A stretch of 64,000 bases of DNA from Octopus bimaculoides (taxonomy: Eukaryota): contig NC_068991.1 in the NCBI RefSeq assembly GCF_001194135.2, positions 42,771,828 to 42,835,827 on the forward strand. Direction: 5' to 3'. Within the stretch, counting starts at the first letter, position 1; every line of letters starts with the position of its first letter. Below, piece after piece: positions 14,364 through 15,830 of this stretch. The notes below the pieces were generated by a model, which did not search any database, was not told the origin of the DNA, and worked only from the letters and a program-made list of their open reading frames with translations. Made by a program: the position numbers and the translations under genes.

Positions 14364-15830
14364 TATTTCTTTTAAATTGCCATAAAGGCATTACACAGAG
14401 GGGGACACTACAACACATGTGGGGACATATAACAATTAAAAATATAAAAATAAAATATGATATAATGAATGATACATGAAAATGAACATGAAAAACAAAT
14501 TAAAATATGATAACATGAATGATATCTGAAAATGATATTATGAAGAGTGTGCTACTCACCCCACACTGAGTAACACCTCTTGCCACCTCTGGGTCCTAAG
14601 TCCTTTTTCTCCTTCAGTCCAATCCTTTTTCCACTTTCTCCATCACTTAGTGACATCATTCTCTCCGCTATGCATTCATAACTTTTTTCACCAAGGATGG
14701 GGTCTTCTAAATTTTGTGGTGTCTGTTCTTTCTTTTTCTTTTTCTTTCTTGTGGGAGAAATGGAGTGGGTGGGTTTGGTGTCTGTATGGGGAGGGTGGGT
14801 CTGAGTGGTCTTGGGTGGGATGGAGTTGGACTGGGGTACCACATCATACTCAGTGGTTTTTTTCTTTTTTTCTCTTACTTTTTTCTGCTCTCTGTAACTT
14901 TCCATTCTTCCTCCTTTTCCTCCTTTCCTCTGCCTGTCTTTTCTTCTTCTCTTTTCTCTTTCATATCCACAATTGTTTCCTCAGCCATTGCCCTCTGTAG
15001 AGGGCAGTATGCTCTTATGTAGCCCTTTTGGCCACATTTAAAACAACGTGGTACTCTGCCCTCTACCCACACCCTCAGCACGATTTCCCCCAACATCACC
15101 GTCTCTGCCAAGTTCTCCAGTTGACCCTCCTCCGTCTGAATAATGAGTTCAAGTGTCTTTCCTTTCCACCCTTCTTCTTCCATTTCTGTGGCTTGGAAGA
15201 CAGCCACCTTCTCCTTGCTTCCAACAAGGACAGCTGCCGCTACCCAAGCCACTTCTATATCTGGTGGAATTGCTTCTACCCTCACCTTGGAAGTCTTTCT
15301 TTCAAGGTATGTGGGCAGAAGCACTACTTCCTCTGTTTTCACCATCACACTCACCAGCCTCCTCACCTCCTCTATTGTCCTAAGTTGGACGACTATTGTC
15401 CCATATCTTCTTCCTTTGGTTATATACATTATCTCCATTGATCGTTCCCTCAGTGCCTTTTCCACTTCTACCTCCACCTGTTCTGCCTTTTTTCCTTTCA
15501 ACGAGTACACCTTATAGGTGATCGATTTCTTCTCCATCCTCTCCATAATTCCTTTGGAAAGTGACAACTTCACATTGCCGCCCACCTTCTGAGCTATCTT
15601 CTCATACTTCTTCTGACCAGCCAAGTCAAGTTCCCTTCGCTTCACCTCCGTGGCTTCAGCAAAACTCCTTGTCTTCAACACTCTGTCCATCTTTATGTCT
15701 GCCCTTACCAGCTCCTCCTCTGATGATGACAACTCAGACCTGTCAAGGTCTGAGTACATCTTCTAAGCAACACAAAAAACTACGTCCGACTCTTACAAAA
15801 TCCAGACAGCAAATAACCCGGCGCATGCAC
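14364..15830 (-). mobile_element. ORF1-only non-LTR retroposon (half-LINE-like), 1467 bp
   Basis: Exact 15-bp TSD ggaagcaagcttctt at 14349-14363 and 15831-15845. 71-nt 5' leader, one ORF1-like reading frame, and a 188-nt 3' UTR ending in A-rich aaaagaaataa. No EN or RT sequence. Confidence 0.85.
14552..15759 (-). pseudogene. L1/Tx1-like ORF1 protein (RRM-like region plus Gag-type zinc knuckle), one frameshift
   Basis: 294-aa ORF 15759-14875 contains KVRVEAIPPDI...VWVEGRVPRCFKCGQKGYIRAYCP (CX2CX4HX4C spacing with H replaced by Y), followed by a basic/acidic tail. A second frame continues to a stop at 14552. The total of 1208 nt is one base off a multiple of 3. Confidence 0.8.

What the first reader, a model, noticed from the sequence alone, without database searches (positions are those of the whole stretch)
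14364..15830. Complete-looking retroposon that encodes only ORF1 (half-LINE-like) and has no reverse transcriptase
Seen: a 1467-bp unit bounded by an exact 15-bp TSD, made of a 71-nt leader, an ATG-initiated ~400-codon frame (one frameshift near 14875-14905), a 188-nt UTR and an A-rich end with AATAAA. The protein has an RRM-like region and a CX2CX4HX4C-spaced knuckle (H replaced by Y). Established: this architecture is typical of ORF1p in L1/Tx1-type LINEs, and ORF1-only HAL1 elements are known from vertebrates. Inference: because the TSD encloses exactly this unit, it moved as an ORF1-only RNA using another element's ORF2 in trans. It would then be a protein-coding non-autonomous family, and I do not recall one described in cephalopods.
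Basis: partly seen in the sequence, partly recalled or inferred. Interest (0 to 1): 0.85.

Follow-up and report, generated by a model that had tools for sequence, protein, structure and literature searches.

The report
Octopus ORF1-only half-LINE retroposon copy
This is a dead copy of a 1.47-kb octopus retroposon that keeps the RNA-binding ORF1 and 3' tail of an L1-like LINE but has no reverse transcriptase, a known kind of element (like mammalian HAL1) that I found no report of in cephalopods.

Summary
On the minus strand (15830->14364) lies a 1467-bp unit flanked by an exact 15-bp target-site duplication, inserted in a SINE whose intact copies carry the 15-mer once. It has a 71-nt leader, an ATG-started ORF of about 400 codons with one frameshift, and a 188-nt 3'UTR.

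The protein belongs to an Octopus family (316 HMMER hits). In O. vulgaris and O. sinensis its homologues sit directly upstream of an ORF2 with endonuclease, RT and zf-RVT domains. That ORF2 matches human L1 ORF2p best (E=2e-71). So the protein is a genuine LINE ORF1. A confident model (pLDDT 86.6) shows two RRM-like domains followed by a CCHC knuckle. The knuckle's His->Tyr change is specific to this copy.

Other ORF2-less units exist at independent loci:
- L003: intact 384-codon ORF, own 19-bp TSD.
- L012: ORF open over 351 codons.
- L005 and L006: two shorter derivatives.

All of them end in the same roughly 80-nt tail as the autonomous LINEs and octopus SINEs.

It is a new member of a known kind (HAL1, HeT-A, Ag-Sponge). 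Still untested: copy number, whether this subfamily shares one junction, and expression.

The parts
15831..15845 (.). TSD copy at the element's 5' side (GGAAGCAAGCTTCTT on + strand)
   Evidence: Exact 15/15 match to 14349-14363. The host SINE continues after it.
15760..15830 (-). 5' leader, 71 nt
   Evidence: Read directly. Partly alignable to the L003 leader (TATTTGCTGT block). It may be shorter than in relatives: L003 has 117 nt and L005 at least 140 nt.
14875..15759 (-). ORF1, first frame: 294 codons plus TAA
   Evidence: 316 HMMER relatives, 79 of them at E<=1e-10. Identity is 73-82% to O. bimaculoides A0A0L8GU38, 43% to the L003 ORF and 40% to the ORF1 of the autonomous LINE in L001.
15307..15525 (-). 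RRM-like domain 1 (residues ~79-151)
   Evidence: AlphaFold2 with a 72-sequence MSA, mean pLDDT 86.6, beta-alpha-beta-beta-alpha-beta topology. Foldseek's best hits are tandem-RRM proteins: IMP3 RRM12, NONO/SFPQ, raver1, hnRNP A1.
15064..15300 (-). RRM-like domain 2 (residues ~154-232)
15004..15045 (-). CCHC-type zinc knuckle, CX2CX4YX4C; the His codon is mutated to TAC at 15019-15021
   Evidence: Relatives read CFKCGQKGHIRAHC or CFKCGLKGHKRANC. Pfam zf-CCHC hits 5 of 14 family members. A PDB profile search hits only CCHC knuckles.
14875..14905 (-). Frameshift zone in an A-rich run
   Evidence: The first frame stops at 14877-14875 and the second is open from 14905. P0002 is continuous across this point, and tblastn switches frame here.
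14552..14905 (-). ORF1 continuation in the second frame: Lys-rich stretch, Pro/Thr-rich linker, ~55-codon tail, stop TAG 14554-14552
   Evidence: The linker PQSNSIPPKTTQTHPPHTDTKPTHSISPTRKKK is homologous to P0002 (E=3e-17), L003 and L012el. The tail after the linker has no detectable homologue.
14364..14551 (-). 3'UTR, 188 nt, AT-rich, with a window-specific 39-nt duplication (14447-14485 / 14497-14535)
   Evidence: Aligned to the 3'UTRs of other ORF2-less units and of autonomous LINEs.
14364..14444 (-). Conserved family 3' tail: ...ATGTCCCCACATGTGTTGTAGTGTCCCCCTCTGTGTAATGCCTTTATGGCAATTTAAAAGAAATA
   Evidence: The same blocks end the autonomous LINEs (L001, L002, L012a/b), the ORF2-less units (L003, L012el, L005, L006) and SINE copies.
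14349..14363 (.). TSD copy at the element's 3' side
14216..14363 (+). Host SINE-like repeat, left part; the right part continues at 15831-15880
   Evidence: At least 12 related copies lie in the window. Copies at 60169-60285, 31758-31873 and 25041-25159 span the insertion point without interruption.

Best explanation
The unit is an inactivated copy of a protein-coding, non-autonomous retroposon. It is an octopod L1-superfamily (L1/Tx1-type) LINE that has lost ORF2 but keeps its 5' leader, ORF1 and complete 3'UTR.

ORF1 consists of an N-terminal helical region, two RRM-like domains, one CCHC knuckle, and a Lys-rich then Pro/Thr-rich linker.

Proposed mechanism:
1. Its RNA is transcribed from a source copy (inferred).
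2. The endonuclease/RT protein of an autonomous relative recognises it in trans through the conserved ~80-nt 3' tail. The same tail is carried by abundant octopus SINEs (recognition is inferred; tail sharing is shown).
3. That protein nicks the target and copies the RNA by target-primed reverse transcription starting at the tail end, not on a poly(A) tract (inferred).
4. The result is the observed 15-bp target-site duplication inside a SINE (shown).

Its own ORF1p probably coats the RNA in cis and favours its mobilisation, as proposed for HAL1 and HeT-A (inferred).

This particular copy can no longer make the protein. It carries one frameshift and a His->Tyr change in the zinc knuckle.
For: - Exact TSD and a reconstructable empty site in a SINE.
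- The ORF belongs to a 316-member Octopus family.
- Homologues are followed by an ORF2 with endonuclease, RT and zf-RVT domains in L001, L002 and L012. That ORF2 resembles human L1 ORF2p most closely (E=2e-71).
- No RT or endonuclease in the window unit.
- Confident tandem-RRM plus knuckle model.
- Independent ORF2-less units with the same layout and no ORF2 remnant: L003 7458-9055 (TSD 7439-7457 / 9056-9074, 18 of 19 identical, intact 384-codon ORF) and L012 1-1185 (351 open codons).
- Shorter ORF1-plus-tail derivatives: L006 6272-5400 with an exact 18-bp TSD, and L005, which belongs to the window's own subfamily.
- 3' tail conserved across LINEs, ORF2-less units and SINEs.
- Non-synonymous differences are well below synonymous ones (pN 0.35 vs pS 0.76), and ORFs remain open in L003 and L012el.
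Against: - No second copy of the window's own subfamily with the same junction could be retrieved. The closest relatives (P0001, P0002, P0005) have no genomic context on record.
- The ~200-250 nt between the linker and the 3'UTR, which would hold the ORF2-deletion junction, is not detectably homologous among the three full ORF1-only units. A shared junction is therefore unproven. Synonymous sites are saturated, so this test is also uninformative.
- The NJ tree does not resolve one origin from several (31% support; P0006, which carries the autonomous-type C-terminal domain, nests in the same group).
- The secondary structure of the tail is unsupported: a 4-bp hairpin with almost no covariation.
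- Transcription, translation and trans-mobilisation were not tested.
Confidence: 0.8

Rival explanations
1. A full-length LINE (ORF1 + ORF2) inserted here with this TSD, and ORF2 was later lost by a local deletion. The unit never moved as an ORF1-only RNA.
For: A post-insertion deletion would leave the same TSDs. No same-junction sister copy was recovered. Internally deleted forms with different breakpoints exist (L005, L006; L004 keeps ORF2 residues 4-148).
Against: Five of five ORF2-less units, at independent loci in three species, have no ORF2 remnant at all and keep the complete 3' tail. Three of them keep the entire ORF1 plus linker, with similar knuckle-to-end distances (~640-760 nt). 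Random deletions would not repeatedly remove exactly ORF2. ORFs remain open in L003 and L012el.
Confidence: 0.12
2. It is a processed retrocopy of a host gene, that is, a domesticated ORF1-derived gene in the manner of L1TD1, rather than a transposon family of its own.
For: Several family members are annotated as ordinary genes: XP_036368115.1, XP_036364761.1, 'EPM2A-interacting 1-like', 'ABC transporter F family member 4-like'. P0001 fuses the N-terminal 197 aa to a C2H2 zinc-finger array.
Against: The unit ends in the LINE/SINE family tail, not a poly(A) tract. The annotated 'genes' inspected are themselves LINE ORF1s or ORF2-less units flanked by TSDs. There are many diverged, often decayed copies.
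Confidence: 0.04
3. It is a chance ORF between two chance repeats of a SINE-derived 15-mer.
For: The 15-mer is part of a repeated element and also occurs inverted at 14242-14256.
Against: Protein homology down to E=5e-73, a confident fold, and a colinear relative with its own TSD. The flanks join into one continuous SINE.
Confidence: 0.01

Closest known systems
HAL1 (half-L1) of mammals
   Same: A non-autonomous derivative of an L1-clade LINE that encodes only ORF1p, retains the LINE ends, and depends on a partner's ORF2p. HAL1s arose several times (PMC5753468; PMC5786205). Here too, several deletion variants exist.
   Different: The host is an octopod mollusc. The partner is an invertebrate L1/Tx1-type LINE. 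ORF1p is the RRM + CCHC-knuckle type (two RRM-like domains), not the coiled-coil/RRM/CTD Transposase_22 type. The 3' end is a specific conserved tail shared with SINEs, not a poly(A) tract.
HeT-A (Drosophila, Jockey clade) and Ag-Sponge (Anopheles, CR1 clade)
   Same: These are the invertebrate 'ORF1-present bipartite non-autonomous LINEs' listed in PMC5786205. They are Gag/ORF1-only and are thought to cooperate with an RT-encoding partner. HeT-A Gag also has CCHC knuckles. Head-to-tail arrays with autonomous partners are seen here as well (L012).
   Different: The LINE clade differs: the partner ORF2 is closest to L1 ORF2p. The arrays seen here are chromosome-internal, and the window, L003 and L006 copies are dispersed with ordinary TSDs. 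No telomeric role is indicated.
L1-Tx1 LINEs annotated in Octopus genomes
   Same: This is probably the autonomous partner family. O. vulgaris is reported to have 13 recently active L1-Tx1 families with 421 insertions (PMC13282606), and L1-Tx1 is listed among the LINEs expanded in three coleoids (PMC8967140).
   Different: Those papers do not mention ORF1 or ORF1-only derivatives. The octopus brain LINE study reports only RTE and Dong full-length elements (PMC9115989).
Tail-sharing SINE/LINE pairs ('stringent' 3'-end recognition)
   Same: The ORF2-less unit carries the same ~80-nt tail as the LINEs and as octopus SINE copies.
   Different: It is Pol II-type and protein-coding, has no tRNA-like head, and is 1.5 kb long.

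Membership tests
ORF1-present bipartite non-autonomous LINE (the HAL1 / HeT-A / Ag-Sponge kind) | Encodes a homologue of the ORF1 protein of an autonomous LINE family | tested here: met
   40% identity to the ORF1 that precedes the endonuclease/RT ORF2 in L001; also homologous to those in L002 and L012a-c.
ORF1-present bipartite non-autonomous LINE (the HAL1 / HeT-A / Ag-Sponge kind) | Lacks ORF2 (endonuclease/RT) | tested here: met
   Pfam finds nothing. tblastn with the L001 ORF2 gives no hit within 14364-15830. The unit is only 1467 bp.
ORF1-present bipartite non-autonomous LINE (the HAL1 / HeT-A / Ag-Sponge kind) | Shares its 3' end with the autonomous partner | tested here: met
   The last ~80 nt are conserved with L001, L002 and L012a/b.
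ORF1-present bipartite non-autonomous LINE (the HAL1 / HeT-A / Ag-Sponge kind) | Shares its 5' end or promoter with the autonomous partner | tested here: inconclusive
   Only a short block (TATTTGCTGT) is shared with the L003 leader. The leaders of L001 and L012 are too diverged to align.
ORF1-present bipartite non-autonomous LINE (the HAL1 / HeT-A / Ag-Sponge kind) | Multiple dispersed copies with the same internal junction, each with its own TSD | tested here: inconclusive
   Three units with a full ORF1 and no ORF2 (window, L003, L012el) and two shorter ones (L005, L006). Three of the five have their own TSDs. They belong to diverged subfamilies, and junction identity cannot be shown. Genome-wide copy number could not be tested.
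HAL1 sensu stricto (Repbase HAL1, HAL1B, HAL1M8) | Derived from mammalian L1, with L1-type ORF1p (Transposase_22: coiled coil, RRM, CTD) | tested here: not met
   No Transposase_22 hit in the window ORF or in 14 relatives. The architecture is two RRM-like domains plus a CCHC knuckle. All named hits are from Octopus.
L1-superfamily LINE (partner element) | ORF2 with an N-terminal APE-type endonuclease, an RT and a C-terminal Cys-rich domain, closest to L1 ORF2p | tested here: met
   Exo_endo_phos, RVT_1 and zf-RVT. Human L1 ORF2p E=2e-71 over residues 3-868, against R2 at 1e-24. Whether the subclade is L1 or Tx1 was not tested.
Type-I LINE ORF1p (RRM + CCHC knuckle) | RRM fold followed by a CX2CX4HX4C knuckle | tested here: met
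   (tandem-RRM matches, Foldseek probability 1.0, E down to 4e-6). The knuckle is intact in relatives. In the window copy His is replaced by Tyr.
Processed pseudogene of a cellular mRNA | A 3' poly(A) tract after a polyadenylation signal, and an intron-bearing parent gene | tested here: not met
   No poly(A) tract; the end is the LINE family tail. A parent gene was not searchable.
HeT-A-type telomeric Gag-only element | Jockey-clade origin and insertion at chromosome ends | tested here: not met
   The partner ORF2 is L1-like. The loci lie at internal chromosome positions, e.g. 70.97 Mb of 109.7 Mb. The window copy has an ordinary TSD inside a SINE.

The most novel reading that the evidence does not exclude
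The ORF1-only elements are not sporadic deletion products. They form an old, selectively maintained, protein-coding 'parasite of a parasite' lineage that has diversified into subfamilies across Octopus species. ORFs stay open even though synonymous sites are saturated. The lineage co-resides head-to-tail with its autonomous L1-like partners and competes or cooperates with them and with SINEs for the same 3'-tail-recognising ORF2p. That would be an L1-clade, non-telomeric analogue of the HeT-A/TART partnership, in a lophotrochozoan.
Probability: 0.25. Interest if true: 0.65.

Novelty: new member of a known kind. Interest (0 to 1): 0.45.

Why it matters
ORF1-only LINE derivatives are rare. The literature I read names only HAL1 (L1 clade, mammals), HeT-A (Jockey clade, Drosophila) and Ag-Sponge (CR1 clade, Anopheles) (PMC5786205). 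An octopus example would matter in four ways:

- It extends the design to molluscs and to RRM + CCHC-type ORF1 proteins.
- It gives a natural system in which one ORF2p serves three classes of passengers with one tail: autonomous LINEs, ORF1-coding half-LINEs and SINEs.
- It bears on TE annotation in cephalopod genomes, where TE expansions are much discussed. Several of these ORFs are currently annotated as host genes ('EPM2A-interacting 1-like', 'ABC transporter F family member 4-like', 'uncharacterized protein LOC...').
- It offers a test of whether ORF1p supplied in cis raises trans-mobilisation efficiency.

The finding fits a known category, so it is useful rather than surprising.

Tried and rejected
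- **Rfam scan of the region**. Only sub-threshold miRNA/snoRNA hits on the flanking CA/CATA microsatellites. These are artefacts.
- **Pfam on the window ORF**. Nothing found.
- **Single-sequence AlphaFold**. pLDDT 41, unusable; replaced by the MSA-based model.
- **Word-indexed protein searches.** The single-sequence search found only P0001. The profile search was swamped by low-complexity words and gave 2 hits.
- **Exact look-ups of P0001 and of the window ORF**. Not on record.
- **Idea: the ORF tail (GKRIGLKEKKDL...KRCYSVW) is the C-terminus of ORF2.** This rested on an eyeballed resemblance. tblastn found nothing, and Smith-Waterman scores fall inside the shuffle distribution. Rejected.
- **Idea: the 97-aa C-terminal extension in L012el equals the C-terminal domain of autonomous ORF1** (as in P0006, P0028). 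BLASTP is not significant. Not supported.
- **Shared-junction test.** The middle segments of window, L003 and L012el show no homology (z about 0). The test is uninformative because pS is about 0.76, i.e. saturated.
- **dN/dS.** dS is not estimable. Only pN well below pS can be stated.
- **NJ tree for one origin versus several**. The key node has 31% support.
- **Consensus structure of the tail**. Only a 4-bp hairpin and one compensatory pair. Inconclusive.
- **Possible second frameshift after the poly-Lys run**, suggested by the P0002 C-terminus. Left open.
- **Metagenome scan**. One irrelevant knuckle hit in what looks like a different retroelement polyprotein.
- **TSD for L005**. None found. 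That unit abuts another LINE's 5' end.
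Full report
**1. What is in the sequence**

The feature lies on the minus strand, running from 15830 down to 14364.

- The plus-strand 15-mer GGAAGCAAGCTTCTT occurs exactly at 14349-14363 and 15831-15845. A third, inverted copy lies at 14242-14256. At up to 2 mismatches the window holds 9 matches, against 0.07 expected from shuffles.
- The 15-mer belongs to a SINE-like repeat with at least 12 copies in the window. 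Intact copies read ...GGTTGGGATGCAAGCTTCTTACCACACAGC... once.
- When the two flanks are joined with a single 15-mer, copies at 60169-60285, 31758-31873 and 25041-25159 align straight across the junction. One SINE was therefore split with a 15-bp target-site duplication.
- Inside the unit: a 71-nt leader (15830-15760); ATG at 15759; a 294-codon frame ending at TAA 14877-14875; a second frame open from 14905 to TAG 14554-14552; and a 188-nt 3'UTR.
- The frame change lies in an A-run. Relative P0002 reads through that point without interruption. P0002, L003 and L012el all support the second frame across the Pro/Thr-rich linker.
- There is no poly(A) tract.
- The 3'UTR carries a 39-nt duplication specific to this copy.
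- No other copy of the unit is present in the window.

**2. The protein**

- Pfam finds nothing in this copy. The word-indexed search found only O. bimaculoides A0A0L8GU38, whose first 197 residues are 73% identical and are fused to a C2H2 zinc-finger array.
- The exhaustive HMMER search found 316 relatives, 79 of them at E<=1e-10. Every named one is from Octopus bimaculoides, O. vulgaris or O. sinensis.
- Long hits are chimeric gene models (Helitron, fn3, LDLa, CCHC arrays). None of them contains an RT.
- Relatives have an intact knuckle, for example CFKCGQKGHIRAHC. The Tyr at residue 247 is therefore a mutation of this copy. zf-CCHC is recognised in 5 of 14 relatives.
- With a 72-sequence alignment, AlphaFold2 gives mean pLDDT 86.6. 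The model shows N-terminal helices, two beta-alpha-beta-beta-alpha-beta domains (residues ~79-151 and ~154-232), the knuckle, and a long C-terminal helix.
- Foldseek's best PDB matches are tandem-RRM proteins: IMP3 RRM12, NONO/SFPQ, raver1 and hnRNP A1 UP1, with E down to 4e-6. TM-scores are low (about 0.25 relative to the query). The domain-level fold assignment is therefore the solid part; the relative orientation of the domains is not.

**3. It is a LINE ORF1**

Genomic context was obtained for several relatives.

- **L001** (O. vulgaris OX597840.1). Three tandem ~5.28-kb units each carry the ORF1 homologue (40% identity), followed by an overlapping 1132-codon ORF2 with Exo_endo_phos, RVT_1 and zf-RVT domains.
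- **L002** (O. sinensis). A decayed version of the same arrangement.
- **L012** (O. sinensis). Three further ORF1+ORF2 units.
- The L001 ORF2 aligns with human LINE-1 ORF2p over residues 3-868 at E=2e-71, against 1e-24 for R2 proteins.
- L1-Tx1 LINEs are annotated in octopus genomes (PMC13282606, PMC8967140).
- In autonomous elements, ORF1 has an additional conserved C-terminal domain. The window unit lacks a recognisable version of it.

**4. ORF2-less units recur**

- **L003** (O. sinensis CM016880.1), element 7458-9055. It is colinear with the window unit end to end. It carries an intact 384-codon ORF (43% identity). It sits in a different SINE and has its own TSD, CAGAAA[C/T]GTTAGCACGCCG (7439-7457 / 9056-9074). 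It has no ORF2.
- **L012:1-1185.** The 5' end is cut by the locus boundary. The ORF is open for 351 codons (57% identity to L003, 46% to the window). A ~130-nt 3'UTR and the tail follow, then directly the 5' end of a full-length LINE.
- **L006** (O. vulgaris), minus strand 6272-5400. An 873-bp unit with an exact 18-bp TSD (AGTTTTTCTGTGAGACAA). It consists of a leader, the N-terminal two-thirds of ORF1, and the tail.
- **L005** (O. bimaculoides). It belongs to the window's own subfamily (75% nt identity over a 146-nt stretch of the ORF). ORF1 runs to mid-RRM2 and is joined to the same 3'UTR start, TGGGGAGCAGCACA... (window: TGGGGTGAGTAGCACA...).
- None of the five units retains any ORF2 remnant.

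**5. The shared tail**

The last ~80 nt are conserved in three groups:
- the autonomous LINEs (L001, L002, L012a/b);
- all the ORF2-less units;
- SINE copies (L003 4084-4163 and 16151-16230; L006 13894-13973).

The conserved blocks are TGTCCCCACAT, TTGTCCCCTCT and GCCCCTTGTGGGTAATAAAGAAAT. Only a 4-bp hairpin is predicted, with minimal covariation. The case for the tail as a recognition signal therefore rests on sequence conservation and on its use by SINE passengers, not on structure.

**6. Mechanism**

- Shown: a TSD-flanked, ORF2-less, ORF1-bearing unit with the family tail, and the same design at independent loci with independent TSDs.
- Inferred: the RNA is captured through its tail by the ORF2p of an autonomous relative and is copied by target-primed reverse transcription from the tail end. 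Its own ORF1p assists in cis.
- The window copy is dead (one frameshift, knuckle His->Tyr). It is probably fairly young, given the perfect TSD and only one frameshift.

**7. What remains open**

- Copy number, and junction identity within the window's subfamily, could not be tested. No octopus genome was searchable by DNA, and the closest relatives (P0001, P0002, P0005) lack genomic context.
- Between the diverged subfamilies, synonymous sites are saturated (pS 0.76, pN 0.35), and the junction-bearing segment shows no residual homology.
- An NJ tree puts the ORF2-less copies in one loose group (31% support), together with P0006, which has the autonomous-type C-terminal domain. That group is clearly apart from the L001/L012 autonomous clade, which has 90% support. 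One origin versus several is unresolved. HAL1 also arose repeatedly (PMC5753468).

**8. Comparison and novelty**

- Kojima (PMC5786205) classifies HeT-A, HAL1 and Ag-Sponge as ORF1-present bipartite non-autonomous LINEs. This element fits that kind.
- It is not HAL1 itself. There is no Transposase_22-type ORF1, it is not mammalian L1, and it ends in a specific tail instead of poly(A).
- Octopus TE papers that I could read describe RTE, Dong and L1-Tx1 LINEs but no ORF1-only derivative. No held paper matched such a description. Absence from the held library is not proof of absence from Repbase or the wider literature.

**Verdict.** This is a new member of a known kind, of moderate interest.

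Noticed in passing
L001 2623-17026; L012 1-14850; L005 7669-7800: The L1-like LINEs form head-to-tail arrays at chromosome-internal positions. L001 has three near-identical ~5.28-kb units. L012 has an ORF1-only unit followed by three full-length units of different subfamilies. In L005 the short unit abuts the 5' end of another LINE. This suggests either insertion next to existing copies or tandem amplification.
   Followed up: partly
L003 4084-4163 and 16151-16230; L006 13894-13973; L004 11318-11397; L005 6529-6608 (-): Short repeats, including octopus SINE copies, end in the same tail (…TTGTCCCCTCTGTGTTTAGCCCCTTGTGGGTAATAAAGAAAT) as the L1-like LINEs. This is a LINE/SINE tail partnership involving an L1-superfamily element.
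   Followed up: partly
P0001 (O. bimaculoides A0A0L8GU38): A gene model fuses the first 197 residues of this ORF1 family to a C2H2 zinc-finger array. It is either a mis-joined model or an exonised TE fragment. No genomic context was on record.
   Followed up: partly
P0004, P0026, P0007, P0008 (NCBI annotations): LINE ORF1s and ORF1-only units are annotated as host proteins: 'EPM2A-interacting 1-like', 'ABC transporter F family member 4-like', 'uncharacterized protein LOC118767527' and 'LOC118765946'. These are probably TE-derived misannotations.
   Followed up: partly
window 27991-28569 (-): A reverse-transcriptase fragment, 25% identical to residues 445-639 of the L001 ORF2 (E=4e-9). It belongs to a different, more distant LINE and is not the partner of the element studied.
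   Followed up: no
window 14216-14363 (and at least 12 other sites, e.g. 28918-29004, 60169-60285, 31758-31873, 47512-47616): The host SINE-like repeat is very abundant in the window. Its 5' and 3' parts form an inverted repeat (14235-14265 vs 14340-14363) around a HindIII-palindromic core.
   Followed up: partly
window 14447-14485 and 14497-14535: A 39-nt direct duplication (87% identity, 50-nt spacing) in the 3'UTR, absent from the other ORF2-less units.
   Followed up: yes
window 14030-14200 and 15920-16130: Long CA/CATA-type microsatellites flank the host SINE. They produce many spurious sub-threshold Rfam miRNA/snoRNA hits (mir-297, mir-3149 and others).
   Followed up: yes
window, 11 N-runs (e.g. 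2096-2549, 10506-10807, 42351-42828): 2086 N bases in 11 runs. The window comes from a gapped scaffold, so nearby repeats may be incompletely assembled.
   Followed up: no
L012 764-1054: The ORF1-only unit in L012 encodes a 97-aa, non-low-complexity C-terminal extension (SYFLCVVRKGDTENARRLFEDNVWQEYEDGSYAVFDFELMGSLMSKC...). It has no detectable homologue in ORF1, in ORF2 or in the other units. Its origin is unknown.
   Followed up: partly
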